The notes beneath the pieces are model-generated. The model worked only from the letters and a program-made list of their open reading frames with translations. It was not told the DNA's origin and made no database searches. A stretch of 64,000 nucleotides of DNA from Octopus sinensis. Taxonomy: Eukaryota. Below, piece by piece: positions 29,101-51,603 of the stretch. The stretch is taken from assembly GCF_006345805.1 (NCBI RefSeq), contig NC_043004.1:31868001-31932000 (forward strand), given 5' to 3'. Each line of letters begins with the position of its first letter. Position 1 is the stretch's first letter. The translations under genes were made by a program, and so were the position numbers.

Positions 29101-29690
29101 GTAAGTGTTCAATTTCATTTCTAAAACTTTTTGCCTTCAGTATTGTCTTTTGACAGTACAGTTTGATTAACCAGAAATTGTTTAACACCAACATCTCTCC
29201 AAACTTCTTTCTTTCCAGCTGCTTCTTCACGTAGCATCTTTAAAGTTGTCCCTTTAGATCTACTATCTACATTTTGTATGTCATATTCTAGTACACGTTT
29301 TGCTTTTAGGTCTTTGCTATTTGAGTGGCCCAGTAACCTATAGCATTCTTAGTTTTACTCTGCTAATGCCCACAACTTAAAAATTGTAGCTAGAGATTAA
29401 TGAAGTGATGCCATAAGGATTAACTTTCCAAAAGAAAAAAAAATCACAAAGAATGAATGATAGTAGCAACATTTACTGCTTCTGTAAAGTAACTTATTTT
29501 CCTTTTACAGTATTATTTAATGTAATATCTCACAGAAACAACAAACTTTTTTTTTACCTATTTCATTGATATACCCTAATTAAACATTATTAATGTGGCA
29601 CATTGAAAACTGATTGACAACCTGTAATGATAGTTTGCCTCTTAGTTCTGAATTACCATCTATCTGGTTATCACATGACTCTTATTTCAG

Positions 29691-30819
29691 ATTCAGAGTT
29701 ACCATTTGCTAGCAGCCGCATTGCAAATCAAATTTTTTCTTTTACAGATATTCTTCAGCCATTGGATCTTCTTCAGTTTGAATGCCTTGGTGTATATGTA
29801 ACCCACCTAGTTACACCTGAGAACTTTTGGTGTCAGCCTGAAGAGAGTGTTGTTTCTCTGAAACAGCTTGAGAAAGAAATGAACCTGTATTGTAGCAATT
29901 GTGATAAAGGGAGTAAGGCTGTGGATCTCCAGCTGTCCTCTCTGTGTGTTGTCAGGTCTGCTAAAGATGGTAAATTTTACCGGGGCAAAGTACAATCTTT
30001 GAAAAAGTTTAGCTGTGATATTCTACTTGTTGATTTTGGTAATACAGAAACTGTTGAACGCAAAAGCATTTGGCCATTGCATAAAGACTTTACAAAACTC
30101 CCAATGCAAGCATTTGAATGTCATTTGGCCTATGTGGAAGGCAAAAATAATTCATGGTCCCAGAACTCTTTCAGTATCTTTCAGAATTTATGCCTAAATC
30201 AGTTGATGACAGCTGAAATTTGCAGCATTCTGCAGCACCCTGGTGGTACAGGATATGTGATAAACTTAACACTGAAAGGTAAGAATGTTGCTGAACTTCT
30301 TGTAGAACGAGAAATAGCTGAAGTCTATGACAAAGTTGAACTTTCAAACGATGTTATTGTTGACCGTTCTGTTATGGATGTAATTGCATGGCTGCAGAAA
30401 CAACAGTACCGGTGGAACCTGGTCTGTGGAGAATTGCTGAATATTCAAATCTGCAGTGTTGTATCTCAAAAGGAATTCTGGATAAAAATGTTTCCAAAAG
30501 TGCCTATTGTTGATAAGCTAAAAGATCTAATGGAAAAAATTTACCGAAGTTTAGCTCCTACTGAAGCTGCTGTAAGTGAATACCAAATTGGTGTTTTATA
30601 TGCTGTTGTTGCTCCTGATGAGAATGTTTATCGAGCCATCCTAAAAGCTGTCACCAAAGAAGATTTAACAGTTTTTGATATTGACTGTGGTCTTACAAAA
30701 GTAGTACCTAGGGACTGTCTCAAAGAATTGTTTCATTTTCTTGCTGACTTACCACCTTTAGCCATCCATTGTGAAATAGCCGAAGACCCAACTTCTGAAT
30801 CCTTTGTATCAGATTTATG
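29691..30819 (+). CDS. Multi-Tudor protein exon (eTudor 7-8)
   Basis: VTPENFWCQ..KFYRGKV..LVDFGN and QKEFWIK..VYRAIL; ttcAG acceptor at 29690 and TG|GTAAGT donor (phase 2). Confidence 0.95.
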
Positions 30820-31803
30820 GTAAGTGTTTTTTAAACTACATTATATGCCTATAACACTAAATACCAGTTGAATCTTAGTTGATGTTAAAGTTTACAATGG
30901 GAACAGGGTCATGTATTTTGATCAGAGAGTTGACTTGGAACAAAAAAATTTAACAAAAAGAATGTGTAGCATGAAAGACACACTGTTAAAACAAAAATTT
31001 CCCTCGTTTATGTATTTCTGCATCAGCTGTTATGAATGTAACGATGTGATTGGTAATAGGAAGGACATCTAGTCATAGAACTCCAAACCAAGAATGAAAT
31101 GAATAAGCAAAATGTGGTCCTCTGACTTATTTAGGAGAGGATGAACTTTGAATAAGAACTGATTCAGTCTTTGATGCATCGATATTTACAAATATATATT
31201 TTAATTGTCATAGCATATCTCTTTACTTATACCAAGTTTATTTTACAGAAATATGATAGGTGCAGGCTTGGTTTTATGGTTGAGCACTTCACTTCCTAGT
31301 GATTTTGAGTTCAGTCCTGGTGTGTGTTACATTTGGCATGACTTCCGCAATAGCATGTGACCAAATAAAGTATTGTGAGTGGGGTTATTAGACTGGAACT
31401 GAAAGATCATCATGGTGTGTTAGTTTACATCTGTGATTGCTTGTATGAAAGTTATAAATGGCAGTGTCATTATAACCAGTCACTTCATATCCCTTGGAAG
31501 CCATGTGAAATAAAAGATCTCTTACTTGCAAAACAGGTAAGAATTATCCATCAAGGACAGCATTCAACTGTAAAACAATGTCTCGATAGCATATTCATCT
31601 AGCTCTTGCTAGCACGGAAAAATGGACATACAATGAACAACACACACATATACAAACACTTTGGTGTTACTCAATCCTTGTAGAGTTCATTTATTAAAGC
31701 TAATGATTTACAATAACACTACTCTTGAAGAAATGAATACAAATGAGAAACTAGGAATAACAAGTACATTGGAGTAAATTATTAGTTTCGGCTCTCTCTC
31801 TCT

Positions 31804-33322
31804 TTATATTCTATAATTTTCACAGACAATAAATACGATATTAATTGTTATTGTCTGAGATTTTGGTGTAATTTGAGAGGATAATACAAAAGTTATGGAT
31901 GATTTAGTGATTTACTGCAAAATCCATGGCGGCCAAAATGATCAGAACGGTTGCTTTTACTCCGTGTTTTAGTATATTTAACCGGCGAACCCTAATGTTT
32001 TGAATTTATTTACGTGACGGTTCGTTTACTAAACTTTAGTAAGAATATCTGCAGTGTACTTTGTTAATATAATGCCACTTACTCCGTTACCAATTTGTCA
32101 GCAGATTATTAAGCTTCGAAAAAAGGATAATTTAAGTATTGGGTCTATTGCAAAGATTGTTAACAAGTCAAAAAGTGTTGTTCACGGTATTCTTAAGGTC
32201 TACAATGATTGTGGTTCATGTCAAGCAAGAAAGTCTACAGGTAGGCCAAGAAAAACGACCTAGAGAGAAGATCGTGCTATGGCAAATTTAAAACTGCTGC
32301 TACTGTTTCTCGGGAAATGAGCGTTGTACTGAAGAAAACTTTATCTCGAAAAACTGTGTCTCGTCGTTTAGTTGAACATGACCTACAAGCAAGAGCACCT
32401 GCAGTAAAGCCACTGATCAGCTCCAAGAATAAAAAGTGTTGTCTTATCTTTGCAACCGAACATGTGTTGTGGTCTCAAGAAAAATGGCAAACGGTGCATT
32501 TCAGTGATGAATCTAAGTTTGTTATTTGGCTCAGTTCGTCGAAAAGTAGGTGAAAAATTGTCGCCTAAATGCCTTAAGACTAGTGTTAAATTCGGCGGAG
32601 GAAGTGTCATGGTTTGGAGGATGATATCTGGGGATGGTGTGGGCCCTTTGGTGCGATTACATGGAAAGGTAAATTCAGGAGTTTATAAACAACTTGTAAA
32701 AGATCATGCCTTGCCTGTGCTGAGAAATTCAACTAAGCGATCACCCATATTCATGCAGGACAATGCCCCATGTCACAAGGTTAAAGTGGTTATGAACTTC
32801 CTCAAGGCTGAAAAGGTTATTGTTATGGATTGGCCTGCTCAAAGCCCAGATCTCAATCCTATTGAAAATGTGTGGAATATTCTAGGAGAACGTTTGAAAG
32901 CCAGAAATCCTAAAACAACCGAGCAATTATGGAATGCCCTTAAGGAAGAATGGAATAAGATCACCCAGCAAGAAATTGAAAATTTAATTTCCTCATGCAG
33001 TCGAAGATGTCAAAGTGTGATTGAAGCTAAAGGGCTTCACACTAAATATTAAATAATTCCAGTATTCTCTGTCATTTTTGATTATTTTGTTATTTTTTCA
33101 ACCGTTCTGATCATTTTGGCCGCCATGGATTTTGCAGTAAATCACTAAATCATCCATAACTTTTGTATTTTCCTCTCAAATTACACCAAAATCTCAGACA
33201 ATAACAATTAATATCGTATTTATTGTCTGTGAAAATTATAGAATATAAAACAACTTTGATAAAAAATTATACCTACTTTTCTGACGAAAACAATGCCGTT
33301 CTGAACATTTTGGCCACAACTG
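31804..33322 (+). mobile_element. Tc1-family IR/DR transposon (DD34E) with truncated left TIR and disrupted transposase
   Basis: Transposase 32072-33052 has GRPRK, FSDESK, QDNAPCH and SPDLNPIE (34 residues between D and E), a stop at 32261 and frameshifts. Right TIR 33099-33322 ends CAACTG|TA; left TIR 31804-31953. Confidence 0.93.
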
Positions 33323-33417
33323 TATATATATACATAATATTGTGTCCAATGTAAACAAACAAGAAATGTTGAAATGTATAGTAGAACAAGTAGAAAGAAA
33401 AATTTTAATCAACACAT

Positions 33418-33451
<34 letters not shown>

Positions 33452-33459
33452 ATATATAT

Positions 33460-33620
33460 TGCTTTCCATGCTGGCATGAGTTAGACGGTTTGCCTGAAAC
33501 TGATAAGCTGGAGGGTTACATCAGGCCTGATTTGGCATGGTTTCTACAGATGGATGCTCTTCCTAATGCCAAACACTCTGAGAGTGTAATGGGTGCCATT
33601 TACATGACACTGGCAACAGC
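33460..33620 (-). mobile_element. RTE 3' tail fragment
   Basis: ctttccatgctggcatg..ggatgctcttcctaatgccaa matches the other tail copies. Confidence 0.65.
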
Positions 33621-35306
33621 CGTGTGTGTTGTATATATATATGTGTGGTGTCTTGCCTTTGAAACATGCTTGAGTCTACATGCTTGAGTCTACTAGCGAC
33701 AGCTGATGTCGGGGGTTTTTTCCTTGTGTAGCACGTCCTGTAACTGTTTTTTTGTTTTTCCCGTTTCTACGTCTTGTGGTGTCCTGTACTCACGTATAAT
33801 TATTTATATATGCATGTATATATACATGTAGATGTAGGTATGTACATATATGTTTGTATGTATGCATATATTTTTATTTATCACATTATATATATATATA
33901 TACATACATACAGAGAGAGACACAGAGGTGTGACTACATCTGAAAAATTTTGAATTTTCCCCTACAGATATGAATTAATTTCCTAAGTACTATTAGACAG
34001 GGGCTACCTGTTATAGGGCTGAATTCCTGGCCCAATTTCAGTCTCTGGGTTTTTAAAAATCTTGCATCATTTTTCCATTACAACAAATGTAATTTATTTT
34101 TACCCCTCATATGAATCTGAGGGCTTCTCTTGAAATAAAAAAAATAGTAATTAATTGAACTCTGTAAAATAAAAACTGGATGTAAACTACCCTTGTTTAG
34201 TGTATGATATTTAAACCACCCTGTCGAGCCCAGATATCCTGCCTGTTTTATGTTCAAACCGGTTAGATCCAGCTTCTCACATCCACCCTACAATGTCATT
34301 CTAAAAATAATCAATCACATCACTGAAGTCTTGAAGCTATGAGACAATGCATGATTAATTCAAAATAATGTGAATAAGTAAATATTTCATTTGACAGTAA
34401 TTGGAATGTTAAAGGGTTAATAGATGTTTAGTAGTTGAGTGTGTATATATTAATATATACATAAATATAATTGTTTGCCTGGATAATAAGCTTCTTTTTT
34501 TTTTTTAATTGAGAATTTGTGTACAATTTTGAGTCATCCAGTTTTTTACTACTTGTTCCCATTTTCAGACTTTATTGACCTTGGAAGAACAAGTCTTGTC
34601 TATTAATGTTTGAAATTTTGTTTACCTTTTCTGCTTTATGACAAAAAAAATCTTTGCTAGTGACTTAAGTATAATAATATATTTTTCTTTAAAACATCAT
34701 ATCTTGTCAATCTTGTTCTACAGATGATTCCTAAGGATTGTCATTTAGCTGTAAAAAATGTATTTTATTTACTTTATCTCAATTGGTGGATAATAGTATT
34801 GCCGGTTTCTAATGATCCAGGAAGTTTCTTAAACTCAGCATAGAACAAATATCACAAGGGAATTTGTTTGAGAAACATTGTAATATATACATAGTGCATC
34901 AGTTTTTTGAGGACACTTTCAAGAGCATTGACTTTCTAACTTATTCTTTTTATCTTACTTTTCTGAAAATTGCTGTCGGGCATCAGATTGACTCTGCAAA
35001 TGAAAAGGCAGAGTATGCAAGAGAAGACCATCCTGTTCATCAGTGCAAGAAGTACATTTATTACTTGTTGTCATCATTTTCCACCTGGTTTCTTTGTTAG
35101 GATGAGTTGTATTGGTCATCATGGCCCAAGTTCTTATTCTGTGTTATTAGACTTGTGAGTAGGTTAGAGTCTTGTGTTTTTCTTTGACTCCATATTTTGG
35201 CATGGTTTTTGTGGCTAGATACCTCCTAACAACAACCACTCCACATAATGTTCTGTTCATTTTAATGCCATTTTTCCAGGTTAGCATGATTAATTTCTCT
35301 TTTTAG

Positions 35307-35396
35307 GACTGGACAGATGAAGGTCAAAGAGTGTAAGGAAGACAACCTCTATGTGGTGTCCTTAATACCTGCAGAATTATCTTCTAGTCATAACAG
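35307..35396 (+). CDS. Multi-Tudor protein 90-nt exon (TGQMKVKECKEDNLYVVSLIPAELSSSHN)
   Basis: ttttAG acceptor and AG|GTGAGT donor, phase 2-2. It bridges exons 29691-30819 and 39259 in frame and supplies the closing strands of eTudor 8. Confidence 0.85.
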
Positions 35397-38093
35397 GTGA
35401 GTACTTCAATATCTGTGTGTGTAGATGTTTATGTGTGTCTGTTTGACCATATATGTATATATAGATTTGCATACTTGTGTGATATTCTCATTAAACACAA
35501 TCTTGTATTTGAACATACTTCTTAACCCAGGGACACTCAGTCAAAAAGATCATAGCTTAAGAATGCTTCTCCCTTAAAAATGTACAGGGAGTTCATTCTG
35601 TATATAACACATTCCAATGTTGAAATAGTTGAATAAACTATCATGATTAAACTAACTTTCAACTTTTTTCCTGTAGAGAAATTCCAATTTTCATGATGTC
35701 TGATTTTGGCAAAATTTAAAATTTCTTAAAACCTCAATCCAATCATTTTTGTCATTTGAACATGTCTTGATAATTCCTTTCTGAACAAAATTCTAGAATA
35801 GATCTATTTCAACAGGTTTCATGTGAGAAATTTTTTAATACCCTAAACCTTTTCACTTGATAATTCCACCACCATACATTTCTTGCTCTCCCCTTGCACT
35901 ATGTCGGTCTCCCCTAACACATACTGGCAACCACACATCATCTCTCTCTCTCACGCTTATCCTTATCTACATTACTCTTTTGCTGCTCTTCAACCCTGTG
36001 TATCACTGGATGTTCACTCCTTCTTCATCATCTGCTACTGTTGTTTGTTAGTTTCCAGTTCTCCATCTAACAACGTTTAGGCCATTTGTTATTCAATAAA
36101 CTGGGTGAGGCGATGTTTATTATTGTTTATCATTGGTTGGAAACTGATTGAGGGTTGTTGGCATAAGGAAGAGTATCTGGTTATAGAAAACTCTACCTCA
36201 GTATAATCTCACTTGATGTATTCAATTAGGGAAAAGATGATTAAACAGTGATAATGGTAAACCAATTTTTGCCATCAATAGCGTGCTGAAGTGGCTTATT
36301 TATGACAACCCTGCTTTCTCCAATTTATCAACTGAACACTCTTCAAACGATTGCTTCAATAGATAAGCCATTTTACCCATGTAAATTAGATACAAGGCAA
36401 GTTTATGATAGCAGTCATTAATACAGCTCTTGAAGATTATCTAATATTGATTTGACTTAAATGGATCTCAAGTCATTGCCATGTTTTGCTTTTAATTCCT
36501 TCTTGATATCTGCACCTTAAAAGGAGTGGTGTCAGGTTCCAATTGCGCATTATTCTCTACATCATACATAGACAACAAACAGAAAATATCAAAGAATGCC
36601 TCTGCTTTGACAGAAATCATCTACATTAATATGCTAATGTCAAATGTGTGATGCTGTCTTGTAGTTAGTTGAAGGAGATAGTGAAAACAGAGAAAGAAAA
36701 GTGTTAATAAGAGCAAAGAGAAAGAGATTATTATTTTTAAATGGTTGGTTAGTTGAAGGGAGAGAGAACAATAGAATGTGATTAGTGCAGGGGAGAGGCA
36801 ATGGAAGTATGCTTACTGAGGGCATCACAAAAGTAGAAGTCAGTACTGTTAAGTGATATAAAGTAAAAAAAAATAATAAATAACAGCTAATAAAGTAGAA
36901 AACCTGAGAATATAGCATTCATATATAACGGTGACACTAACTTACAATCTCACACAATGTCAAAACAAAGAGACACGAAGACACACATACATGTATACAC
37001 ACACACACACATATCTACAGATGTCTTTCAACTTCATCTACCACATCCACTCACAAGGACTTTGTTGACCTAGGGCTAAAGGGTTATAATAGAAGACATT
37101 TGCCAAAGGTACCAATAATGGAATAGTTAAGAAGTTCATGTATAGCTTTCTTGAGAGTGTACTTTCAGTATTACCTATATGGACTGTTACACTATCTCAA
37201 GAAAATTCAAATGCTCGAGAAAAACATACAATTTCATCTTAAAATTTTAAAATAACTATGGAATCTCCATAGGTATTGCTTCTTTTACATCAATCAAATA
37301 TCAGTTTTCTTTATAGATGCCATAAACGTTATAGTTTCTTGTGTGTGGCAGCAGATTTGTCTGGTACTTCAGAACAATAATCATATGCAAGCACACATTA
37401 CTCAAACCTAGTTCAGTCTAGATCTAGACTTTCACTCTACTCCTCACTACTGAAAGCTTATACTGTACACATCAGCAACATCTTATCCATCATCAATATC
37501 CATGTATGACTAGATTGATGGATGATTTTGTAAAGTAGTTGTTGTTTGTGTAGTGTCATGTATTGTTATTGGTTTCAAATATTAGTACAAGACCAACAAT
37601 TTCTGGGGAGGGATCAGTCGATTACATTGACCCCAGTTCTCAACTGGCACTTATTGCATTGACCCCGAAAAGATGAAAAGTAAAGTTGATCTAAGCAGAA
37701 TTTGAAATCAGCCTGACGAAATGCTGCCAAGCATTTTGCTTTGCATGTTTATCATTCTGCCAGTTTGCTGCTTTAGTGTCGTGTATGTTATTGTAACTTT
37801 ATAGGTATCATTTTTACCTTTACTGTGATTGCCTCTCAACTCATCTCTTTCATATTCTAGCAGATGAACATTAATTTTACTCTTTAAAACTTGACCGAAT
37901 GGAGCTAATTGACATTATTTCTTGGAATGTGACACAGATATTCAAAGACAAAATCTTTGGCAATGTGTTAGTGTTGAATGTACAATACTGCACAGCTGTA
38001 TATGCTGGTACTAACTACCAGAACATAAAGCAGGAGTTGAACTTGTAATATGTCTATCAGGTATACTAAAGTATGGATGATTATTATTGCTCT

Positions 38094-38305
38094 GGAGGTG
38101 AGCTGGCAGAATTGTTAGCATGTAGGACATAATTGCTTAGTGGCATTTTGTTCATGTTTATAGTCTGAGTTCAGATTCTTCTGAGGTTGGCTTTGTTTTT
38201 CATCCTTCAGGGTTGATAAAATAGATACCAGTTAAGCACTGGGTTGATACAAATGACTAGACTCTGCCTTCTAATTTTCAGGCTTTGTGCCTATAGCAGA
38301 AAGGG
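38094..38305 (+). mobile_element. tRNA-derived SINE, family B (degenerate)
   Basis: Homologous to 43453-43677. Minus-strand copies lie at about 37590-37780 and 58180-58310. Confidence 0.7.
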
Positions 38306-38482
38306 TTTTTAGTGTTAGTTTTTAGATTTAGTTTCTGTTATAGCCACCTGGCCCATTATATTGGTGTTCTTTATACTTATAACAATAAATTATATTGAAT
38401 TAAATTATCCTAAGTTTCTGTATCTGTCTTATATAACCACCACTTTGTCAGTTATATTAGAGCTCATCAGGAGCATCATACA

Positions 38483-38993
38483 TCTATATATATAAAACTG
38501 TAGTTGTGTGAGTGTCTGTCTCCTACGATTTAGATTCCTAACTACTCCCACATTTTGCGGTGCAGTTTAACCAGATTCGGGTATCTTATAGTCGTGATTC
38601 ATATCGAGCCCGTCTGGGTATTAGCGCGCGTCTACGATGAGTCTACGATTTAAAAATAATTTAACATAATTTTTTTCCATTTTAACGCATATTTTTTCGT
38701 GTGTCGATGGCGGCGGAGTTGGCATCCATGGTCACACCTGCACTTGTGTTGCTTCTCCCTCTTCTTCCCTCCCTCGTGAAGCTGTGGGGAAGGGAGTGTA
38801 AGGAAATCAACGTCGTAAAGCATTGTCAAGGAGACCAGCGTTCTTTTAGAACAACGACTTCATGGCTTGAAGACACCAAAATTACCATCATTTTTTATTC
38901 CATTTTTAATGCATTTTTTTGCTATAACTCACTAAAAATGCTTATATAGTTATTTCCCTTACAAACCCGAGCAACGCCGGGCGATACTGCTAG
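38483..38993 (+). mobile_element. Non-autonomous Helitron, copy 2
   Basis: A|TC 5' end, hairpin cccgagcaacgccggg and CTAG|T 3' end; colinear with 6606-7243. Confidence 0.88.
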
Positions 38994-39258
38994 TATAATA
39001 TCAAATGGTTATTGGAACATTTACCAAAATATGACAAATTCCCTTAACTTCATTTTTACTGTCTTCTGTAAATATTTTGATGTGAATAGATTTTCAGTAG
39101 ATCATATGTTCCAATTTTCTTGTTCTAAGTAACTGAAAGTTTGCCCTCAGTCTCTCTGGTGATTCAGGAAAATAGACTTGTGTGTGGTGACTTTTTCAGA
39201 TGTTTTTCAATGTAATTGTTTTAATAGTTCAGTAATTTCTGTTTGTTTTACTTTGTAG

Positions 39259-41388
39259 GTATTTAGAACCAACCTATAATTCAGGCTTCACTATGGAAGT
39301 TAAAGTTTGTTTCACAACGAATCCTCAAGATTTCTGGTGCCAGTCATCTGATTCCTATGGTCTTGATAGCTTAATGAATCAGTTGCAGATTTACCAAGAT
39401 GATGATATCATCCCAACTGCAGAGATCTATGTAGGATTACCATGCCTTGCCAAATACAGTGAAGATGGTGCTCTTTATCGAGCTGAGGTTGTCTCAGTCA
39501 ATGTTGCCTCATCATCTGTAGAGGTGATTTTCTGTGATTATGGTAATATTGAGTCAGTAATGATCACTGAGTTGATACCAATTCCAGAATGCTTCATGAT
39601 TCTCCCAAAACAGGCTTTGCACTGTAGTTTAGCTGACGTATCTCCAAAAGGTGACAGTTACTGGGATGAAGATATGTGTACTGGTTTTGAAGAGATTGTT
39701 TCTGAAAAGGTGTTTACCATGTCAGTTCTGGCTGAAATGGCTAACAGTGTTTATATGGTCAACTTAAAAGATGGTAATGACAAACTTCTTCAAGAAATTC
39801 TGATTGAGTGTGACATGGCCTCAGGCCTCACAGCACAAATGTTTAGTGAATGTGGAGAAAGTAATTCAGATCTTCAGTCAGCAAATCATCCAGTAACAGA
39901 CAACAAATCACAAGATACTGATTCTCCAGGCGATGATGAATCACAAGATCTTCCTCTCTTGATGCTGAGCCCTCAGAAACTGAATCAAATGCATATATGT
40001 CCCCAGAAACTGAAGCAGTTACATCTATGTCTCCAGAAATTGAAGCAGTTACATCTATGTCTCCAGAAACTGAAGCGGTTACATCTTTGTCCCCAGAAAC
40101 TGAAGCGGTTACATCTATGTCCCCAGAAACTGAAGCAGTTACATCTATGTCCCCCAAAACTGAAGCAGTTACATCTATGTCCCCAGAAACTGAAGCAGTT
40201 ACATCTATACCTCCAGAAACTGAAGCCGTTACATCTATGTCCCCAGAAACTGAAGCCGTTACATCTATGTCCCCAGAAACTGAAGCCGTTACATCTATGT
40301 CCCCAGAAACGCAAGCAGTTACATCTATGCCTCCAGAAACTGAAGCAGTCACGCCTATATCCCCTGAAGGTGAAGCAGTTACATCTGTGTCCTCTGAAGT
40401 TGAAGCAGTCATGTCTGTGACCCAAGAAACTGAATCAACCCTTCAGCGTACAGCTGTGAAAATGACAGAAAATGAAGATTCTGATTTGGATGTCTACCAA
40501 GATACTTTTGATGACTTTGACATTCCAAACTCTTCAATTAATCCTGACAGATGTAATCTAGAGAATTCAAGCACTGACAACAGTGAAAGCATGAAGAAGA
40601 GTAATGACAACCCAGCATTCCAAGATGACACCACAATAACCAAACAATTCCCTGATGACCAAAATGTGGTCATTACGGCCTCTGAAAACTGTCCAGCTGA
40701 TCAAAATGAAAATGATCTCAATGAAAGAATCAGTTCAAAGTTTACCAAAGAGAACCTTCCAGATGTCAATATGACAGACAACAGTGATTTCAACAGCAAC
40801 GTAATTAGTTCTTCCCAAATTCAAACCACTGCTTTCATTGATGAAGGTAAAACAGCAGAGTCTTCCACAAACCATCATGCTGAAAATGACCTTCCTGCTG
40901 AAATTGAAACAAATCGTTCATTGGATGTATTTGATTGCAATCCTAGTGAATGGGAAGAATTAGATCAAGGTTTAAGTACTAGTCTCGTGTCAAACTGCTT
41001 GATAAAACCCAAAGACACTGTCCCTTGTTCTGATTCTAAAACAGAAAATACTTTGAATCCATTCGAGGATTGCCAGACATTTAATCTGAAGCCATCTTTA
41101 GGTGATATGGCAGGAGACCCTCTATTGTCATTCCTTGATTGGAACATGGAGATCAGCAACCGTATCAAAGTTAGATTATTGAATTTCATTGCACCAGATG
41201 ACTTTTATGTGACCCCTTCAGATGATTCTGATGACTATTTGCAATTGTCCATTGCAATGAAAGACTGTGTAGATACACTAGAGCCTTTCTCTGATATGGA
41301 TGATATAATTGGATTACCATGTCTTGCAGAAATTGAAAATTCATGGCAACGAGGAATTATTAAATCTAATGATAACAATGCAATAAAT
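39259..41388 (+). CDS. Multi-Tudor protein exon (eTudor 9, acidic repeat linker, start of eTudor 10); needs a -1 frame change near 39950
   Basis: The entry frame (ORF 39293-40420) encodes PCLAKYSEDGALYRAEV..CDYGN. The exit frame (ORF 39997-41445) encodes APDDFYV..PCLAEIENSWQRG up to the donor AAT|GTAAGT at 41389. Confidence 0.88.
39997..40434 (+). repeat. 30-bp coding minisatellite, 14 full copies plus a partial (MSPETEAVTS)n
   Basis: Unit atgtccccagaaactgaagcagttacatct, directly visible. Confidence 0.97.
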
Positions 41389-42869
41389 GTAAGTCAATTT
41401 CGCTTTTTTCTTTATTGTTTTGTTTTACTTCTGTATATTTTTTAATTGAATGATTCCTTGATGTCACCAACCTCTGTGGTTAAATCTAATAAATTGACTG
41501 CTTAAGTTTTGGTTAATTTTCAGTATATAGTTAAGATATTAGAAACACTTAGATTAATATTAGTAACTTTATGTATTGGTATATATTATACCTTTGTTGA
41601 TGAATTGGAACCCAATGCTGGCTTTAGATGAAAAGTGACTGAAGACTATTTCACTCGTGAGGACACTCCTAAAAGACCTATTTTGAGGCTCTAGGTTTTA
41701 GCCTGATACAGTAAATGCAGCACTACTGGAATTTCATATTTGATGTTGTAATGAGACTTTGAAGAAGACTTAAACTCTTTAAGATGAGGCATCTGTAGGT
41801 GAGTGAGCTGATATTAAGGCTTAAAGTATGGCTCTTTCAATTGAATGATCTCTCTATCATGAACTACTTTATGCAAAGTACTGGGTGTGGCAAAAAATCC
41901 ACCCAATATTACAGGTTGAAAAATGTTCTAACAGCAAATACATGATGTGCACTGTTCCAAACCATGGTGTGCACTGTTCCAAACCATGGTAGAAACTGGG
42001 GAAAAAAGTCAAACATTTGCTACATGAAGTCATCATTACTGTCTGCCTAATTACACTAATTAATATGCATTGAAACGAGTGGTAGGTTTTTCTACTGCAT
42101 TCTATGTAGCTGTTGACAGCTGAATACTTTCACATTACTCTCTTTCTCACACAGTCTTCCATCACATCACTATATTTGCTCTTCATCATTCTTGAGCTGA
42201 GACAACACTGGATAGAGAAGACTCTTTACTCTTGCTGGGAGTTGGTCATCTTTATGATGGTGTCTCGATAAAATTGCAAACTCTATGAAATGGTTGAAGA
42301 GTGGAACAGTATCTAACTGCTGAATCCATGACAAAAAATGTCATGTGTGCGTGAGACTTGGCCCTATTAAGGAGGACAGCAGATTCAAACAATGACAATA
42401 AAGTCTGTGGAGTCAGAGAAATTAAAATCAGTTTCATTTGTTGCCATTCCTTGTTAATAAATCATCATCTAGCTTTGTACTTTCAAAGACAAGTTGAATG
42501 AGCACTGCCTTATTTGAAGAACAGGTAAGGATTAGTGACAGAAAGGCATCTGGTTGTAAAACAAAGCCCAAAATATGTATTCATCAGACCCATGCTAGCA
42601 TGGTAAAACGGATGTAAAGCTAACAAATATAAGTCCAGATATATTTTAATAAATTTTTAAATGTATTAATTGAAGTCCAAGTAATGTAGTTATTAGAAAT
42701 CTAGTTATGAAGGAGCTAAATCTACTGGTATTGTACTATTCTTCCATTGTAGAATCTTTTACTTTATGTCGGTTGACCTAACTGTAAGAAATAGGTAACA
42801 AATCATCTGGGAGTGTAACTTTGATACTTGTCCAGAAAAACATCACATGTACTTGATATTATTATAAAC

Positions 42870-43068
42870 CAGGGATGGGCAACTTTTCCTCAACTGGGGG
42901 CCGCATTGTACCATTTCCAAGTGGGAGAGGGCCACATGGTAAAACATAGATGCATGAAATATTGCCCATGTTACACTGAATTTTCTGTAGTTATTCTTAA
43001 TTTTATTTGTCTTAGTATGAAATTAGTAACCTAAAAACTCGTTGAGGGCCTCAGGTTGCCCATGCATG
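42870..43068. mobile_element. hAT-type MITE with a perfect 8-bp TSD
   Basis: TIRs CAGGGATGGGCAAC / GTTGCCCATGCATG, flanked by ttataaac at 42862-42869 and 43069-43076. Confidence 0.88.
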
Positions 43069-43452
43069 TTATAAACTCAGGTTGTGTGCATACCCATATA
43101 ATTGCCATGAGGTTGAGGTGGTATTTATACTTTTATGAGTAGTGCTCAGTATTTCTGACTTTTGTCTTAGAGGCCTGGCTTTGGTTTCCTGCATGGAAAC
43201 TCTTTATATTGTGTTTCTGACTACACCAATGCTGATGAAACCCATCTGGCTTGATATTCTGTTTCTTTGATTGTTAGAACTGTTTTTTTTTTTCTTCTTC
43301 AAGTAGTTCTAACTCTAATATTGTTTGATGTTGATGCCTCAGCATAAGGCCAGCTGGAACCTGTAAGTGTGATATATAATTCCTTTTTAATTACACTTTT
43401 AACCACATACACACACAATGTAATATATTGTGTATGACAAGATGCTCATTAG

Positions 43453-43677
43453 GAGGCAAGCTGGCAGAAACGTTAGCAGGCCGGCCAAAACGCTTAGCGG
43501 TATTTCATCTATCTTTACGTTCTGAGTTCAAATTCCGCTGAGGCCGACTTTGCCTTTCATCCTTTCAAGGTCGATAAATTAAGTACCAGTTACGCACTGG
43601 AGTCGATGTAATTAACTTCATCCTTTTGTCCTTGTTTGTCCCCTCTGTGTTTAGCCCTGTGTGGGCAATAAAGAAAT
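43453..43677 (+). mobile_element. tRNA-derived SINE, family B, full length with 14-bp TSD
   Basis: gagttcaaattcc B-box-like motif; TSD aagatgctcattag at 43439-43452 and 43678-43691. Confidence 0.88.
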
Positions 43678-44561
43678 AAGATGCTCATTAGTAATTATTA
43701 TTTGTAACTATCATTAGACAGACATATGCCCCCCCCCCATATATATATATACACATACACAATAGACTTCCTTCAGTGTATCCCTACCAAAATCCATTCA
43801 CCAGGCTTTGGCCAGCCTGGGGCTGCATTGGAAGACATTTGTTCAAGGTACCATGCAGTGGGATTGAATCCAGACTAAAACCACATGACTGGAAAGTGTA
43901 CTTCTTAACCATCCCGTTGTTGGCACCTTTGGCAAGTGTCTTCTACTAAAACCCTAAGTCAACCAAGTCCTTGTCAGTGGATTTGGTGGATGAAGTTGAA
44001 AGAAGTCTGTTGTGTGTTTGAGTCTCCTTGTCTTGACATTTTATGAGATTGTAAGTTAGTCACTGCTTTATAAAGGTGTCCTTCATTTCCAGTCTGTTTG
44101 AAAACATATCTGGCCATAGGGAAATATTATTTTGGAAAACAGGTGATGGTTGGCTACAAAAAGGGTATCTGGGTATCTGTTCATAGAAAATTTACCTCAA
44201 CAAATGCCATTTGACCTGTACAAACAGAAAACTGGACATAAGTGATGTGTGTATGTATATACACATATAGTTTCCATATGCCAAATACAAAATATTGTAT
44301 GTGATAAAAGACACTCAAGGTTCCATATAGGTGTAAGTGTTATTGTAGGTTTTATTATGTCACCATCTCACTATTGAGCAATGAGTTAATTAGATGCTAT
44401 ACCATACTTAATGTAAATAAACCTAGAAATTCTAATATACGTTACTATGGTCAACAGGAACAGTGGGGACAACTCTTAGTATTTAAATTAAAAATAAACT
44501 GCATTGAAGAGTGATTGCATATATCTGTCTTGCCTTGATTTTCTTGAAATCTTTGTTTCAG

Positions 44562-44727
44562 GTGTTTTTTGTAGACATCGGTAAAGAATTATGTATGGAA
44601 AAATCAGTACTGAGAAAATGTCCTCCATCCTTGTACAAACCACCTGCAATGTCTATCCACTGCTTCTTAGTTGATGTTCTACCCTTAAACAGTTCTTGGA
44701 GCACCACAGCATTTGAAATCTTTAAAG
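44562..44727 (+). CDS. Multi-Tudor protein exon (eTudor 10 core)
   Basis: VFFVDIGKE..PPAMSIHCFLVDVLP..WS; tttcAG acceptor (phase 0) and G|GTAGCT donor (phase 1). Confidence 0.9.
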
Positions 44728-44834
44728 GTAGCTATCTTACTATCACACAATTTTATTTTAAAGCAAAAATATTTTCAGAAACATTTTTTTTCTTTTTTCT
44801 TCTTTCATTATTGTACGGTTGGGCAAACTGGGAC

Positions 44835-45112
44835 AAGCAGTGTCTTCAGTAAGGTTTGAACTCGTAACCCGCATACTTTTTTAGCGTATAGGTTCCTCAC
44901 CTGGACAGGACACCAGTCCGTTGCAGGTGAGCTGCAAGATGCAGGAGGAAAGAGTGAGAGAAAGTTGTGGCGAAAGAATTTCGTCATTACCTTCTGCTGG
45001 AGCCGCATGGAACTTAGGTGTTTCGCTCATAAACACACACATCACCCAGTCTGAGAGTCGAACCTGCGATCCCTCGACCGTGAGTCCGCTGCTCTAACCA
45101 CTAGGCCATGTG
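44835..45112 (-). mobile_element. tRNA-derived SINE, family C
   Basis: Minus strand shows tggcctagtggttag (A box), ggttcgactc (B box) and a body motif ctgcaacggactggtgtcctgtccagg. Confidence 0.75.
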
Positions 45113-45169
45113 ATGAATATGGCCTAGTTTTACACAACTGAGGACAGTGGTGTAAAGAGGTGCCAATCT

Positions 45170-45760
45170 CTAACCCTGACCCTAACTGTAGAGGGAACCT
45201 GAGGAAGAGGTAAACCAAGGAAGACATGGGACAAGGTGGTAAAGCATGATCTTCGATCGTTGGGCCTAACAGAGGCAGTGATAAATAGAATAATATAAAG
45301 CAAGTTTGAATTTTAACCATTGTCCCTGAAAAGAGTGTCATATATATATGTATGTGTGTATGCCATGCTTGAGAAAACCTGTTAAGCCATGTGAAACCAT
45401 AGTCATGGCCAATGCTAGTGTCATGTAACAGGGACCTGTGCCGGTAACACACAAAAAGCACCCGTTGAACATTGAGCCTCACAGAGGCAATGATAAGTGA
45501 GCAAGACCTTTGGCAGTATGCTGTGCTTGAAAAGACTCAAGCCAAGTGAAAGCATAGCTATGACTGATGCTGGTGTTATGTAACTGGCATCTGTGGCAGT
45601 GGCACATAAAAGCCACTCTTGGAGTGGTTGGCATTAGAAAGGGCATCCAGCTGTAGAAACCATGTAAAATCAGACTGGAACCTGTTGCAGGTCACCAGCT
45701 TACCACTTTCAGTCAAACCATCTAACCCATGCCAGCATGGAAAGCAGATACTAACTGATG
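45170..45760 (+). mobile_element. Degraded RTE ORF end plus 3' UTR
   Basis: gaggtaaaccaaggaagacatgggacaaggtggtaaagcatgatct ([15 protein letters not shown]-like) followed by tail motifs. Confidence 0.75.
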
Positions 45761-47379
45761 ATGAATAAAGAGAAGCTTTTTTGAAATATACATTGCTTAA
45801 CTCTTTAGCATTTCAAAAGGTTATATCCAGCCCAAATATTGTCCTGATGTTCCAAATGGCCAAATCCAGCTTCTCACACCTACTCTACAATGTCATTCTA
45901 AAAATGATATTGTAGGGTAAAATACATTGTTGGATAAAATAAACAATCACATCATTGAAATCTCTAAGCTATAGGATAATTCATGATAAAGAAAATGTAA
46001 ATAAATAAGCATTACATTTGACTGAGTAATCTGAATGTTAAAGGGTTAATAGTCTTAAAAATATTTACTTAGTTTACACACTACAATGCTTCGAGCAGAT
46101 TACAATATTATTTTGTTATAAGTATTTGAGTGAATTTTAGTTACCAACATCTAAAACAAATGTATGGCTGTGCACTTTCTGTTACTAATCTCTTTTCATA
46201 CAATTTGTTGCTAGTTCAAAATATATTTTATATAATGTGGCAGAGTTGGTTAAGAAGATTGATTCCCAACCACTAATTTTGAGTTCAGTCCCACTCAGTG
46301 GCATTTTGGAAAAGTGTCTTTTAATATAGCCCTGGGCTAACCAGTCTTGGTGAGTGAGTTTGGTAGATGGAAATAGTAAGAAGCAATAGCATGTGTGTTG
46401 TGTCCCCTTGTCTTGACATCATGTGACAGTTGTAAATGAGCCTCACTGTCTTAAAAATAGTGCTGTTTGCTTCCAATCTTCTGTGAAAACGTCCAAGTAT
46501 TGCTTGGAAGCAGGTAAGAGTTGATGATGCAAATGTGGAAAAGTAGATGTTAAAATGATGATTACAGTGTGTGAATATATATATATATAACAATTGCAGC
46601 ATGGAAGGTGTTTATAAGCCATTTAAGAAACACACAAAACCGTTAGATTCACTTCAACATTTAAATTTAATTTGTCAAAATATTTTCGTCGTTTTGAGAC
46701 TGCGACCTGTTCACTAACAAAATTCCGTGCTGCATCTGAGAAAGTAACTGTTAGTTCATGATATATATATGTAATATGTGTGTGTGTATGTATGTATTCA
46801 TGTTTGTATGTATATATGTATGTGTGCATGCCTATACGCATGTATGTATGTACTTACGTATGTATGTGAGTATTTAGGAGAGTGTGTAGACGTGTCTGTG
46901 TGTGTGTACATGTGAACGTATGTTTATGTAATGATATGTGTCAGTTCAAGTTGTATATATGACTGTTACCTTGTTGAAGGTTGTATATATACACACATAT
47001 ATACATTTATATAGACACACACACACGTGTGTGTGTGCGTTTATCCTTCTCACCTCCGGCTAACAGTGAATGGATACGTCTAAGATACAAAGATGCTCAT
47101 ATAACCTTATACATATATACAAGTACACACAATCATATAGACACTTACACATACTCACAAATATACGTATAATCTTAAAGTATACACACATATACGCTCA
47201 TCCATCTCTACATACATACACACACACACATACATATATATATGACACTCTTTTCAGGGACAATGGTTAAAATTCAAACTTGCTTTATATTATTCTATTT
47301 ATCTTTTTTTTTTTACATGCATACATATATATATTTACACACACACACACATATATACATCTACACATACGTACGTACA

Positions 47380-48720
47380 TATCAAACCTGGTTTGATGGG
47401 TCTTTTCAAGCATGGCATATTGCCAAAGGTCTTGGTTACTTGTCATTGCCACCATGATGTCCAGCGCTTGGAAGGGGTCTTTTATGTTCCACTGGCATGG
47501 GTGCTAGTTATGCAATGCCAGCATCAGCCATATTGCCTCCATGAGGTCCAACGCTCAGAAGATGCTTTTTACATGCCACCAGCATGGGTGCCACTCACAT
47601 GACACTGACAATAACCACAGCTATGATTTCACTTGACTTGACAGGTCTTTCAAGCAGGGCATATCGCCAAAGGTCTCAGTCACTAGCCATTGCCTCCGTG
47701 AGGCCCAACGTTTAAAGATCATGCTTCACCACTTCATCCCATGTCTTCCTGGGTCTACCTTTTCCACAGCTTCCTTCCACTGGTAAACATCGACACTTCT
47801 TCACACAACTGTCCACATCCATATGAATCACATGACCATACCTATGCAGTTGCCTCTTATGCCCAGCTTTTCTCAAGACACCTACACCCTGCCATACATG
47901 CACACTGACATTACACATCCAGCGAAGCATACTGGCTTTATTTCTTTCAAGCTTACGCATGTCCACAGCTGTTACAGCCCATGTTTCACTGCTGTGTAAT
48001 ATTGCTGTTTGTACACAGGCATCATACAATCTGCCTTTCACTCTGAGAAAGAGGCCCTAAATTACCAACAGAGCTAGGAGCTCTCTGAACTTTGCCCAAC
48101 TTATTCTTATTCTAGCAGCTATGCTCTTGGATCATCCACCCCTGCTACTGACTTAGATAACGAAGCTATCAACTACTTCTAGCTTTCCCCTCTGGCATTT
48201 AATGGAGTCTATTTCCTGCATATTTCTAATGTTAATTGTACATGTGCACCTATCACACAAAAGCTATTTTCCCTGTTAACCTACTTCTGATATTGCTACA
48301 CCTCTTATGTGTCCATAGCCTACACCTGGTACATCTTATGGAGTTTCTACCTACACCTTTTCTACAGATCAAGTAGGGCTCTCTACCTGCAGGGATTTGT
48401 GATTTGTCTGCTTTCCTACTTGCTATGACTTTGGTTTTTGATAGATTAACTGTAAGGCCCTTTGATTCTAAACCTTGCTCCCACACCTGAAATTTCTTTA
48501 GTTCTGGAACTGCTTCAGCTATGAGAACAAGGTCACCAGCATAGAGGAACTTCCAGAAGTCTGTCTTAAACTCCTCTGTTATTTCCTGGAGGATTATGAT
48601 GAACAAGAGGGGGCTGAAGAATGATCCTTGGTGAACCCCTACTTGTACCCCGAATTCATCACTATACTCATTACCAACCCTCACTTTACTCACCAACACT
48701 TCTTTGATAGTTTTTATCAT
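47380..48720 (-). mobile_element. 5'-truncated, degraded RTE LINE
   Basis: ORFs 48253-48765 (VGVHQGS..SPLLF..LYAGD) and 47712-48041 are homologous to 59600-61300. Confidence 0.9.
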
Positions 48721-48839
48721 TAATATGCTTCCATCCAACAGCATGGCATCTAATGTGACCACCACAACCCTTTTTCTATCTTATTTTTCTTAATCCTCTC
48801 TTACGTATTCCAAATATCTTTCTTATTTCATTGTTAAAG

Positions 48840-49049
48840 AATTTACTGACAGTGAGCAGCTTGAGATGAGAATTGATGTGAAGTCTTCAACGAAATATGG
48901 TGTGTACCTTTACAAGGAAGCTGATGATGACAACTTGAATGACCGTTTGATTGATTTGGGTCACGCCATTGCTGAACCTGGCTCCAAACTGGAAGCAAAC
49001 CGTGAAATTGAGCAGACACTGTTAGACCCACACCGGACATCACATATGG
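48840..49049 (+). CDS. Multi-Tudor protein exon (end of eTudor 10)
   Basis: Acceptor ttgttaaAG at 48839 gives K-E-FTDSEQLEMRIDVK..LNDRLIDLGHA; donor G|GTTAGT (phase 1). Confidence 0.85.
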
Positions 49050-51603
49050 GTTAGTTATTCTTTTCATATTTCTTAATTTTGCCTGCTTTTCCTGTTAATT
49101 CAGACACTGGAAAGTTGATTGCTAGGATACCACCTCAATGGTGCAAGTCTCTTTCTCTGGGGAAGATACTTATACTGTCAACTACTAATGCTGCCATCCT
49201 TCTACTATAGCAGTGGTGGGTACTAATCACACACCAGAATCAGAACTTGGGACATAGATGAGTATAACCATGTTCATCTACTCCTTGTTACATTATGTAA
49301 AGAATTTGGACAACAGAAGAAGAAAAAAAGATTTTATGCGTCATGTATTGAAGACAGTTTTGAGTACATGCAGTAAGGCGGGTTAGACAGATTGACTCAC
49401 CACAGCTATGGAGTCCTATCTACTCCTTTCTGAGATGTTCCAGCAACAATTGGTGATCCATCACTGCTAAAGTGGTCTTTTAGTGTACTTGTTTATCATG
49501 TCAATATATTTTTTGTGTTCCTGCTCAATATTGTTAGAAAGTTGTTAATACTAAGCTTGTTTCATCATGCTTCTAAGAGATTTTGTTTTTGTCCAACTGG
49601 GACTTAGCAATCCTTCAGAATACTCTTTTCTGAGTGGTAGCAGTAGTGCTGTCACTGACAACCCACCTATGTAATAAGTTGTACTGAGTTACATTGGTAA
49701 CAGGTACACCCATCTATACAAACAGAGCACCTTGAAATATACATACAAGTGTATGTGTATGTTTACATGTGTGTGTAGTGTTGACTGGAATCTTTAAATA
49801 ATCCTGTTCTTTTCCATTCACAAGAATCAATACAAGATTTGGTTTTTCTTTTAAATGTTTTTTGCTTTTTCATTTTTGCTTTTCAGGCCATAGTGTATTC
49901 TGGACTTATCAAATGTTTTTTTTTATTTAAATAATTTTTTTTTTAAATAGTAGAGTTTGATTTGGTGAGATTTTACTACATTTTCTATCAAGTAGAATTA
50001 GCAGTGCTTGCTTAAAATATTTGTTCTTGGTTGATATTGCTTGATTAGTTTTACAAGTTTAGGTTTTTGTGAGAATTGTTGCATTCTGACATATATCTGA
50101 ACTTTGAAATAAAACCTGACATTTCCATGATGAACTACTTACCTGCGAACAAGTGGAAGTGATGTTCTTATCTTTTTATTTTCAGCCAGGGACACTGAGG
50201 CAGTCATGATAATGTCATTTTACCTGAAAAGAAGACACAATAACTTGAGGGATATAAATTCATTTTCTGCTATAACTGAGGTTGTAATCCATACTGAAAT
50301 AACTATGATCAATTAGCTCATTTGTTTATTAGAGCAAAAGTTAATACTCCAAAAGCAATTTTAAACTCTCCAAGTGAAACAGGTTCAAGGATTCAGTATT
50401 CAATCATTTGGTTTAACAGGAATTCACTATTACTCATTTTGCTGCCATTCTATTAAAATCACCAACTTTCAGCCTTTAGTCATTTTGTGGTACTGACCAC
50501 CATTCAAATTACATAAATAAGATGGCTAGCTCATTTATATAACAGCGCTACCTTCTGTCAGACTGCAGTCTTAGAAATATAAATTAATCAAATTGAAAAT
50601 GTTGGCTATTACGCACACAGACATCCCCTTTCAGTAGTATTAGATGACATCTGGTTCTAAAAGAAATTTAACCCTTTTTATGCTAATCCACCTGAGACCG
50701 CCCCTTGTTTTAAATGATGTCAAAGACTTCCGTTAAACCCATTAATTTATGTTCTAAACACCAGCTTCATAATGAAACAGCAAATTTTAATAAATTCTTC
50801 ATTATTTTAAAAATACATTGAATCAAAGTGTATTTCAACAGAAATATGGGAATAAAAAATGTTTGTATACCTAACCATGTCACCCAAAATTGAGTCTTTG
50901 GAACCACTTCATAAAGGTTTTGAGTGAGGTTCATGTCAAAATAGGAAAGAATTACAGGTGAGAGGTGTCAGTTGTATCAACTGACCATGTAAAAACAATT
51001 GTTTTAACAAAATCTACCTTACAGATGTTAGACTGGAAAAATGAATGTATAGCATATGTATATATGAGTGTGTGCATGTATATATCTTATGACATATATA
51101 TCTATGTGTGTGTGTGTGTGTGTGTATTAATTTCTTTATCTACAGGTTTTGGACCAAGATACTTTTGAGGTCAACTGGTATTAACATGAGGACTACCAAC
51201 ATTTTGGGTGTTTTCTTTTTTGTTTTTCTCCAAAGATTGCATTAGTTTGGTGTTTATTTTTTTGTTTGTGTGTATTCAGTTTTATTTTTTGTATTTTGTT
51301 TGTTATATGTTGTTGTTTTATGTTTTTGTTTGTTTTTTCTGCATGCATTGCTGCACAAGGAATGAGACCAGCCAAAATGGCATTTTGGTTATAAATAGGA
51401 AGTTTACTATGAATTTAAATGCATGACTTAGCGGAGTTTTCACATTAAGAACACCCCCGTTCCCTACCAACAATTGGCTGTATAGAGCCCCTTGGCAAAA
51501 AATGCTGTCTTTTAAAGGCCTCATGATATTGTGAATTATAATTAGCTTCTATCAGTTTAAACATTAAAAAGTTATGTGTAATTTGCATTGTTATGCTGTA
51601 GTC

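What the first reader, a model, noticed from the sequence alone, without database searches (positions are those of the whole stretch)
39861..40420. Frame discontinuity in the Tudor gene with a 480-nt dual-open-frame zone
Seen: the entry frame is open to TGA 40418; the exit frame, which encodes eTudor 10 and splices onward, is open only from 39940. Across the overlap the same repeat reads (CPQKLKQLHL)n, basic and Cys-bearing, or (MSPETEAVTS)n, acidic. Unit variants (gca/gcg/gcc, tcc/tct) are silent only in the acidic frame, so that is the evolved frame and the switch probably lies near ttcctctctt (39951-39960). Options: (a) 1-bp assembly error; (b) a real null allele giving a 2,120-aa, 9-Tudor protein with a basic tail and likely NMD; (c) a cryptic 116-nt intron AA|GTAATT (39861) to ccctcAG (39976) that restores the frame, whose retention would switch the C-terminus from acidic and full-length to basic and truncated.
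Basis: partly seen in the sequence, partly recalled or inferred. Interest (0 to 1): 0.75.

Follow-up and report, generated by a model that had tools for sequence, protein, structure and literature searches.

The report
One-base gap splits octopus Tudor gene
The frame break is real in this sequence, but it is a single missing T in the Octopus sinensis reference copy of a 10-Tudor germline gene. It is most likely a sequencing or assembly slip, less likely a private null allele, and it is not a hidden intron or a dual-coding device.

Summary
On the + strand, the frame that carries Tudor domains 1-9 runs to TGA 40418. The frame that carries Tudor 10 opens only at 39940. A 30-nt x 15.4 tandem repeat (39974-40434) is open in both.

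The window is Octopus sinensis. Its spliced exons reproduce exactly two RefSeq proteins, XP_029640178.1 (2101 aa, 9 Tudor, basic tail) and XP_029640179.1 (502 aa, 1 Tudor). The public annotation therefore already splits the gene at this point.

O. vulgaris (CAI9726720.1, 2617 aa, 10 Tudor) and O. bimaculoides read straight through: ...DLPSLDAEPSETES.... Their DNA has CTTCCTTCTCTT where the window has CTTCC-TCTCTT. One T is missing at 39955/39956, about 20 nt before the repeat.

The proposed 116-nt intron is rejected:
- It is coding in both relatives.
- The homologous exon is uninterrupted in a distant cephalopod.
- Its splice signals are weak, and all five RefSeq isoforms read through it.

Openness in two frames is a trivial property of a stop-free repeat unit.

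Without reads, an assembly error (about 0.7) cannot be separated from a real null allele (about 0.24). This window shows no gross excess of indel errors. Interest is low.

The parts
21162..62105 (+). The whole gene: a 10-Tudor 'tudor domain-containing 6-like' gene of Octopus sinensis. RefSeq annotates it as two genes, LOC115215146 and LOC115215147.
   Evidence: Spliced exons 21162-21223, 22922-23190, 25450-29100, 29748-30819, 35307-35396 and 39259-40420 translate exactly to XP_029640178.1. Exons 40462-41388, 44562-44727, 48840-49049, 59153-59212 and 61960-62105 translate exactly to XP_029640179.1. Pfam TUDOR hits: 9 + 1, against 10 in the O. vulgaris orthologue.
39259..41388 (+). One exon that encodes Tudor 9, the linker, the acidic repeat, a second linker and the N-half of Tudor 10.
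   Evidence: The acceptor tttgtag|GT at 39258/39259 and the donor AAT|GTAAGT at 41388/41389 were fixed by protein-guided junction search. The same exon with the same boundaries is one uninterrupted ORF in L003, a distant cephalopod.
39955..39956 (+). Site of the lesion. One T of an ancestral TT is absent: CCTTCTCTT has become CCTCTCTT. The frame changes here.
   Evidence: DNA alignments with O. vulgaris L001 and O. bimaculoides L002. Both relatives encode DLPSLDAEPSETE.
39974..40434 (+). A 30-nt tandem repeat of 15.4 copies. Its native reading is (MSPETEAVTS)n. Out of frame it reads (CPQKLKQLHL)n.
   Evidence: TRF; units laid out in register; codon-position test. O. vulgaris has the same 15.4 copies.
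40418..40420 (+). TGA that ends the out-of-frame reading. It is the stop codon of the RefSeq model XP_029640178.1.
39937..39939 (+). Last stop (TGA) in the downstream frame. It sets the 5' limit of the zone in which the switch must lie.
39861..39976 (+). It is rejected and is ordinary coding linker (SNSDLQSANHPVTDNKSQDTDSPGDDESQDLP...).
40462..40464 (+). Internal ATG that RefSeq uses as the start of the artificial downstream gene LOC115215147.
   Evidence: tblastn places P0022 residue 1 at 40462; exact reconstruction.

Best explanation
The window is the Octopus sinensis reference copy of a single-copy gene for a 10-Tudor scaffold protein. In the large exon 39259-41388, one T of a TT dinucleotide is missing at 39955/39956 (CCTTCTCTT in the relatives, CCTCTCTT here). 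This lies about 20 nt upstream of a 30-nt tandem repeat. From that point the acidic repeat (MSPETEAVTS)n is read one base out of register as (CPQKLKQLHL)n, until a TGA at 40418. The true downstream frame, with Tudor 10 and the C-terminus, stays intact but disconnected.

The most likely cause is a residual single-base omission in a consensus built from noisy long reads. On that reading the animal makes the normal protein of about 2618 aa. The two RefSeq genes, the basic tail and the 'dual open frame' are then knock-on artefacts.

Shown: the lesion, its position, its derived state, the annotation split, and the absence of an intron. Inferred: that the lesion is in the assembly and not in the animal.
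For: - Identity of the window: its spliced exons give XP_029640178.1 and XP_029640179.1 of O. sinensis exactly.
- O. vulgaris CAI9726720.1 (2617 aa, 10 Tudor) reads straight through. It is 99.8% identical upstream and 99.4% identical downstream of the repeat.
- The only difference at the junction is one missing T, and O. bimaculoides shares the TT state, so the loss is derived.
- Downstream of the lesion, all five exons, their splice sites and the Tudor 10 frame are undamaged. The repeat's variants behave as coding in frame B.
- The lesion is the only frame break in about 7.85 kb of coding sequence.
- From my own recollection, not from a tool: the O. sinensis reference was assembled from noisy PacBio long reads. 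The O. vulgaris genome paper read here (PMC10700109) cites it only as Li et al. 2020, and its full text does not contain the word 'HiFi'. Single-base omissions are the typical residual error of such assemblies, and short-read polishing is weakest next to tandem repeats (general knowledge).
Against: No reads could be examined, so the error is inferred, not seen.

A polarised three-species comparison over 27.3 kb of this locus gave these counts:
- O. sinensis-specific: nine 1-bp indels and 79 substitutions.
- O. vulgaris-specific: eleven 1-bp indels and 147 substitutions.

The O. sinensis assembly is therefore not visibly riddled with indel errors here. My rough bound is about 1e-4 per base, which gives at most about one error expected in this coding sequence.

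The missing base sits in a run of only two T, not in a long homopolymer.
Confidence: 0.7

Rival explanations
1. The deletion is a real allele carried by the sequenced O. sinensis animal, heterozygous or homozygous, or segregating in the species. It would give a 2101-aa protein with 9 Tudor domains and a tail of about 155 residues that is basic and contains Cys. That protein would lack Tudor 10 and the acidic C-terminus. The mRNA would have a premature stop upstream of four exon junctions and would be a likely NMD target.
For: The lesion is in the deposited sequence and is lineage-specific. Local 1-bp indel counts do not show an error-prone assembly. The break lies in a disordered linker in the last fifth of the protein, where truncation is most tolerable.
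Against: Tudor 10 and the C-terminus are conserved across three Octopus species and are undamaged in the window. If real, the change must therefore be very recent. Frameshifts in a conserved germline gene are rare compared with residual consensus errors (established knowledge, my estimate). No independent O. sinensis sequence could be found.
Confidence: 0.24
2. A cryptic 116-nt intron, 39861 (GTAATT) to 39976 (AG), is spliced out and restores the frame. Its retention would switch the C-terminus.
For: Removing it does join the two frames without a stop.
Against: - 878 GT/GC..AG pairs do the same.
- The segment is translated in frame in O. vulgaris and O. bimaculoides, which need no intron.
- The homologous exon is uninterrupted in L003.
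- The donor AAA|GTAATT lacks G at -1 and at +5.
- The acceptor tract has 6 T, against 10-14 in the nine real introns, and it contains an upstream AG.
- GC is 0.42 (exon-like). The ends of the real introns have GC 0.25-0.38.
- The shortest real intron is 647 nt.
- All five RefSeq isoforms read through it.
Confidence: 0.02
3. Programmed -1 ribosomal frameshifting within the overlap zone, or another recoding event, rejoins the frames.
For: One slippery-type heptamer, C CCA AAA, lies in the correct register at 40153.
Against: Five such heptamers occur in any register in this exon, so one in register is what chance predicts. It sits in a single variant unit, 200 nt past the lesion. The relatives are simply in frame, so there is nothing conserved to recode.
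Confidence: 0.01
4. A genuine gene fission is fixed in O. sinensis: two separately expressed genes, as RefSeq draws them.
For: RefSeq models LOC115215146 and LOC115215147.
Against: The downstream model starts at an internal ATG (40462) inside the same exon, 41 nt after the upstream stop, so no room is left for a separate promoter. The split coincides exactly with a 1-nt lesion. O. vulgaris, which separated about 2.5 million years ago (PMC10700109), has one gene.
Confidence: 0.02

Closest known systems
Octopus vulgaris CAI9726720.1 / A0AA36B2F5 (Tudor domain-containing protein, 2617 aa; GCA_951406725.2, OX597821.1)
   Same: It is the orthologue, with the same exons and the same 15.4-copy 30-nt repeat. 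Protein identity outside the repeat is 99.4-99.8%.
   Different: It has TT where the window has T, so it is one continuous reading frame with 10 Tudor domains.
RefSeq O. sinensis XP_029640178.1 (LOC115215146) and XP_029640179.1 (LOC115215147)
   Same: Both are encoded exactly by this window.
   Different: They are drawn as two genes. The evidence here says they are two halves of one gene, cut by a 1-nt lesion.
Multi-Tudor germ-granule scaffolds: Drosophila Tudor and vertebrate TDRD6. By sequence, TDRD1 is the best vertebrate hit to Tudor 9-10.
   Same: It shares the array of extended Tudor domains (10 PF00567 hits). 'TDRD6-like' is RefSeq's name. The TDRD1 hits show 30-35% identity.
   Different: Orthology to a particular TDRD was not tested. 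The acidic 30-nt repeat linker is specific to Octopus and is absent from L003.
Split or truncated gene models caused by assembly indels or gaps (a well-known annotation artefact)
   Same: A single-base lesion turns one gene into two models. In O. bimaculoides GCA_001194135.2, the same gene is split by a 780-N gap inside the same repeat.
   Different: Here the cause is a 1-nt omission and not a gap. Whether it is in the animal remains unproven.

Membership tests
Extended-Tudor (TDRD6/Tudor-like) multi-domain protein | Multiple PF00567 Tudor domains in one polypeptide | tested here: met
   There are 10 hits in the O. vulgaris orthologue, and 9 + 1 in the two O. sinensis halves.
Extended-Tudor (TDRD6/Tudor-like) multi-domain protein | Binding of methyl-arginine on PIWI proteins, and germline expression | not testable with these tools
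   No expression or binding data were available. A literature search for the locus names found nothing.
Spliceosomal GT-AG intron (39861-39976) | Absent from the coding sequence of orthologues or from the mature mRNA | tested here: not met
   The segment is translated in frame in O. vulgaris and O. bimaculoides. The exon is uninterrupted in L003. All five RefSeq isoforms retain it.
Spliceosomal GT-AG intron (39861-39976) | Donor and acceptor signals, length and composition like those of the gene's real introns | tested here: not met
   The donor is AAA|GTAATT. The acceptor tract has 6 T and an internal AG. Length is 116 nt and GC is 0.42. The nine real introns are 647-10103 nt, have 10-14 T in the tract and no internal AG, and their ends have GC 0.25-0.38.
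Programmed -1 ribosomal frameshift site | A slippery heptamer at the frame change, conserved in relatives that also need the shift | tested here: not met
   The only in-register heptamer is 200 nt downstream and is expected by chance. The relatives are in frame.
Assembly or consensus single-base error | A single base, specific to one assembly, that breaks an otherwise intact and conserved reading frame | tested here: met
Assembly or consensus single-base error | Raw reads of the same individual disagree with the consensus | not testable with these tools
   No read data were accessible. Exact-ORF look-ups in Logan assemblies found nothing.
Assembly or consensus single-base error | The assembly shows an excess of lineage-specific 1-bp indels | tested here: inconclusive
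   Nine O. sinensis-specific against eleven O. vulgaris-specific 1-bp indels in 27.3 kb. The ratio of indels to substitutions is 0.11 against 0.075.

The most novel reading that the evidence does not exclude
The 1-nt deletion is a real O. sinensis allele, segregating or recently fixed. It would truncate a conserved 10-Tudor germline scaffold to 9 Tudor domains and append a tail of about 155 residues that is basic and contains Cys, translated out of frame from an acidic repeat. That would be a natural knock-down or neomorph of a piRNA-pathway scaffold.
Probability: 0.24. Interest if true: 0.3.

Novelty: not a real feature. Interest (0 to 1): 0.1.

Why it matters
The main value is for curation. 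LOC115215146 and LOC115215147 of O. sinensis should be merged into one 10-Tudor gene of about 2618 aa. The (CPQKLKQLHL)n tail in five RefSeq isoforms should not be taken as a protein feature. Anyone who uses the O. sinensis annotation would otherwise count a truncated Tudor protein plus an orphan 'uncharacterized protein'. That includes the O. vulgaris brain atlases, which PMC10700109 says were built on it. If the allele proved real, it would be a modestly interesting natural truncation of a germ-granule scaffold. It would not be a new mechanism.

Tried and rejected
- The word-indexed protein search returned only vertebrate TDRD1 with a 703-aa junction query. A clean 104-aa junction query returned nothing at all. 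That index does not return the octopus proteins. The exhaustive representative search found them.
- Exact look-ups of the two window ORFs (39293-40417 and 39997-41442) in Logan and other assemblies, meant to find independent O. sinensis contigs, returned no record. Short-read contigs probably break in the repeat.
- A literature search for the locus and protein accessions gave 0 papers. The O. sinensis gonad transcriptome paper does not mention Tudor.
- Cryptic intron: rejected.
- -1 frameshifting: rejected.
- Dual coding of the repeat: rejected. The basic frame has most unit variants on its codon position 2, and four of six frames are open simply because the unit lacks stops.
- An attempt to show an indel-error excess in the O. 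sinensis assembly gave no excess. For that reason the real-allele rival keeps 0.24.

Full report
**Observation.** I read 39500-40800 and translated the three + frames over 38800-41800.
- Frame A (codon starts = 2 mod 3) is open from 39236 to TGA 40418-40420. It encodes a complete Tudor domain (Pfam PF00567, E = 3e-25) and then a Ser/Asp-rich linker (...ECGESNSDLQSANHPVTDNKSQDTDSPGDDESQDLPLL). After that it reads (CPQKLKQLHL)n.
- Frame B (= 1 mod 3) is closed by TGA 39937-39939 and open from 39940 to 41442. It reads (MSPETEAVTS)n, an acidic linker, and the first two-thirds of another Tudor domain. It runs to a GTAAGT donor at 41389.
- Tandem Repeats Finder reports one array, 39974-40434, with period 30, 15.4 copies, 87% matches and no indels.

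**Which frame is native.** I laid the units out in register. Of the 33 departures from the consensus unit, 19 fall on codon position 3 of frame B. Ten fall there for frame A and four for the third frame. Seventeen are silent in frame B, against about 8 expected. The variants are partly shared by neighbouring units, so they are not independent. The decisive argument is continuity: the array has no indels, and frame B runs on into Tudor 10. Openness in two frames is not remarkable. A 10-codon unit that lacks a stop in a frame stays open for the whole array, and two minus-strand frames are open across it as well.

**What the window is.**
- An exhaustive HMMER search with 40300-41394 found a 2617-aa protein at E = 7e-241. 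It is O. vulgaris CAI9726720.1.
- Its 90% cluster holds the O. sinensis RefSeq proteins XP_029640178.1 (LOC115215146, 2101 aa) and XP_029640179.1 (LOC115215147, 502 aa), and O. bimaculoides models.
- I fixed the exon junctions by protein-guided search. Splicing the window then reproduces both O. sinensis proteins exactly, residue for residue, including the ...KLKQSCL tail.
- The window is therefore the O. sinensis reference, and the public annotation already splits the gene at this break.
- Pfam counts 10 Tudor domains in the O. vulgaris protein, 9 in the upstream O. sinensis model and 1 in the downstream one.

**The lesion.**
- The O. vulgaris protein reads ...DDESQDLPSLDAEPSETESNAYMSPETEAVTS.... 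O. bimaculoides reads ...DDDESQDLPSLDAEPSETEAVTT....
- I fetched both loci (L001, L002) and aligned the DNA. Over 39840-40010 the window differs from O. vulgaris by one substitution and one gap. The relatives have CTTCCTTCTCTT, and the window has CTTCC-TCTCTT.
- One T of a TT is missing at 39955/39956. Because the outgroup has TT, the loss is derived in the O. sinensis sequence.
- This is the only frame break in about 7.85 kb of coding sequence. Outside the repeat the two halves are 99.8% and 99.4% identical to O. vulgaris.

**The intron hypothesis.** Removing 39861-39976 does rejoin the frames, but so do 878 other GT/GC..AG pairs. The table compares the candidate with the nine real introns of the gene.

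| Feature | Nine real introns | Candidate 39861-39976 |
|---|---|---|
| Length | 647-10103 nt | 116 nt |
| Donor | GTAAGT or GTGAGT in six of nine | AAA\|GTAATT, no G at -1 or +5 |
| T residues in the acceptor tract | 10-14 | 6 |
| AG in the last 15 nt | none | present, 7 nt upstream |
| GC | 0.25-0.38 at the ends | 0.42, like the exons |

- The segment is translated in frame in both relatives.
- In a distant cephalopod (L003, a Logan genomic contig from run ERR12921340, 32% protein identity), the homologous exon has the same acceptor and donor positions. It is one uninterrupted 523-codon ORF.
- All five RefSeq O. sinensis isoforms read through the segment. They differ only by whole repeat units.

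I reject the intron.

**Recoding.** One heptamer of the X XXY YYZ type (C CCA AAA, 40153) is in register for a -1 shift. Five such heptamers occur in the exon in any register. This one sits in a single variant unit 200 nt past the lesion, and the relatives need no shift. I reject recoding.

**Error or allele?** Reads were not available. I therefore asked whether the O. sinensis assembly shows an excess of lineage-specific 1-bp indels. Three-way MAFFT alignments of O. sinensis, O. vulgaris and O. bimaculoides covered 27.3 kb of this locus.

| Lineage-specific changes | 1-bp indels | Substitutions |
|---|---|---|
| O. sinensis | 9 (5 deletions, 4 insertions) | 79 |
| O. vulgaris | 11 (3 deletions, 8 insertions) | 147 |

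- There is no gross excess. The ratio of indels to substitutions is somewhat higher in O. sinensis (0.11 against 0.075). By my rough estimate that allows an error rate of about 1e-4 per base, or up to about one error in a coding sequence of this length.
- A real frameshift in a conserved germline gene is a priori much rarer, but it is not negligible in a heterozygous marine invertebrate.
- The undamaged downstream exons and splice sites fit either an error or a very recent mutation.
- I put assembly error at about 0.7 and a real allele at about 0.24.

**Comparison with what is known.** The gene belongs with the multi-Tudor germ-granule scaffolds (Drosophila Tudor, vertebrate TDRD6). RefSeq's name is 'TDRD6-like', and the best vertebrate sequence hits to Tudor 9-10 are TDRD1 at 30-35% identity. 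The break itself belongs to a familiar class: one gene split into two models by a consensus indel. In O. bimaculoides GCA_001194135.2, a 780-N gap inside the same repeat splits the same gene, whereas the older annotation had 2574-2634-aa full-length models.

**Verdict.** The interesting interpretations (cryptic intron, C-terminal switch, dual coding) are rejected. What remains is a curation point, plus a roughly one-in-four chance of a private truncating allele. Interest is low.

Noticed in passing
window 39974-40434 (RefSeq isoforms X2-X5 of LOC115215146: P0021, P0026, P0025, P0027): The four shorter isoforms differ from X1 by exactly 10, 10, 30 and 130 residues, all inside the out-of-frame repeat. 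That corresponds to 'introns' of 30, 30, 90 and 390 nt, which are whole repeat units. These look like RNA-seq alignment artefacts or copy-number polymorphism of the array, not splicing.
   Followed up: partly
L002 20208-20987 (O. bimaculoides GCA_001194135.2, CM046608.1): A 780-N gap sits inside the homologous repeat, with 5.4 copies before it and 12.8 after. It splits the same gene into XP_014774883.2 ('partial', 2008 aa) and XP_052826182.1 (652 aa). The older annotation had full-length models of 2574-2634 aa.
   Followed up: partly
L003 575-2143 (Logan contig from ERR12921340, species not identified): The homologous exon of a distant cephalopod has the same boundaries but no 30-nt acidic repeat. 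Within this sample, the repeat linker is therefore an Octopus-lineage addition.
   Followed up: partly
window 40591-40599: There is an in-frame 3-nt difference in the linker. O. sinensis has SESMKKSND, O. bimaculoides has SESMKSND, and O. vulgaris has SESLKSND. The extra AAG keeps frame B.
   Followed up: no
window 16832-17635 (+), 32417-33049 (+), 48256-48780 (-), 59379-60824 (+): Transposable-element ORFs lie upstream of the gene and in its introns. There is RVT_1 reverse transcriptase at 16.8 kb, at 48.3 kb (minus strand, intron 7) and at 59.4 kb (with a PHD finger, intron 9). There is a DDE_3 transposase at 32.4 kb (intron 4).
   Followed up: partly
window 5800-6200, 12000-13100, 14700-15800, 18200-18600: Long TA/CA-type microsatellite tracts give many spurious ORFs in both strands ([12 protein letters not shown]) of up to 425 codons.
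   Followed up: no
window 21700-63250 against L001 and L002/L004: In the polarised three-way alignment, the O. vulgaris lineage carries nearly twice as many private substitutions as O. sinensis (147 against 79) and more long deletions (18 against 10). The cause is not clear. It could be rate difference, polymorphism, or residual ONT errors in the O. vulgaris assembly.
   Followed up: no
tools: The word-indexed protein search did not return any of the octopus proteins, even for a query nearly identical to them. The exhaustive representative search found them at once.
   Followed up: yes
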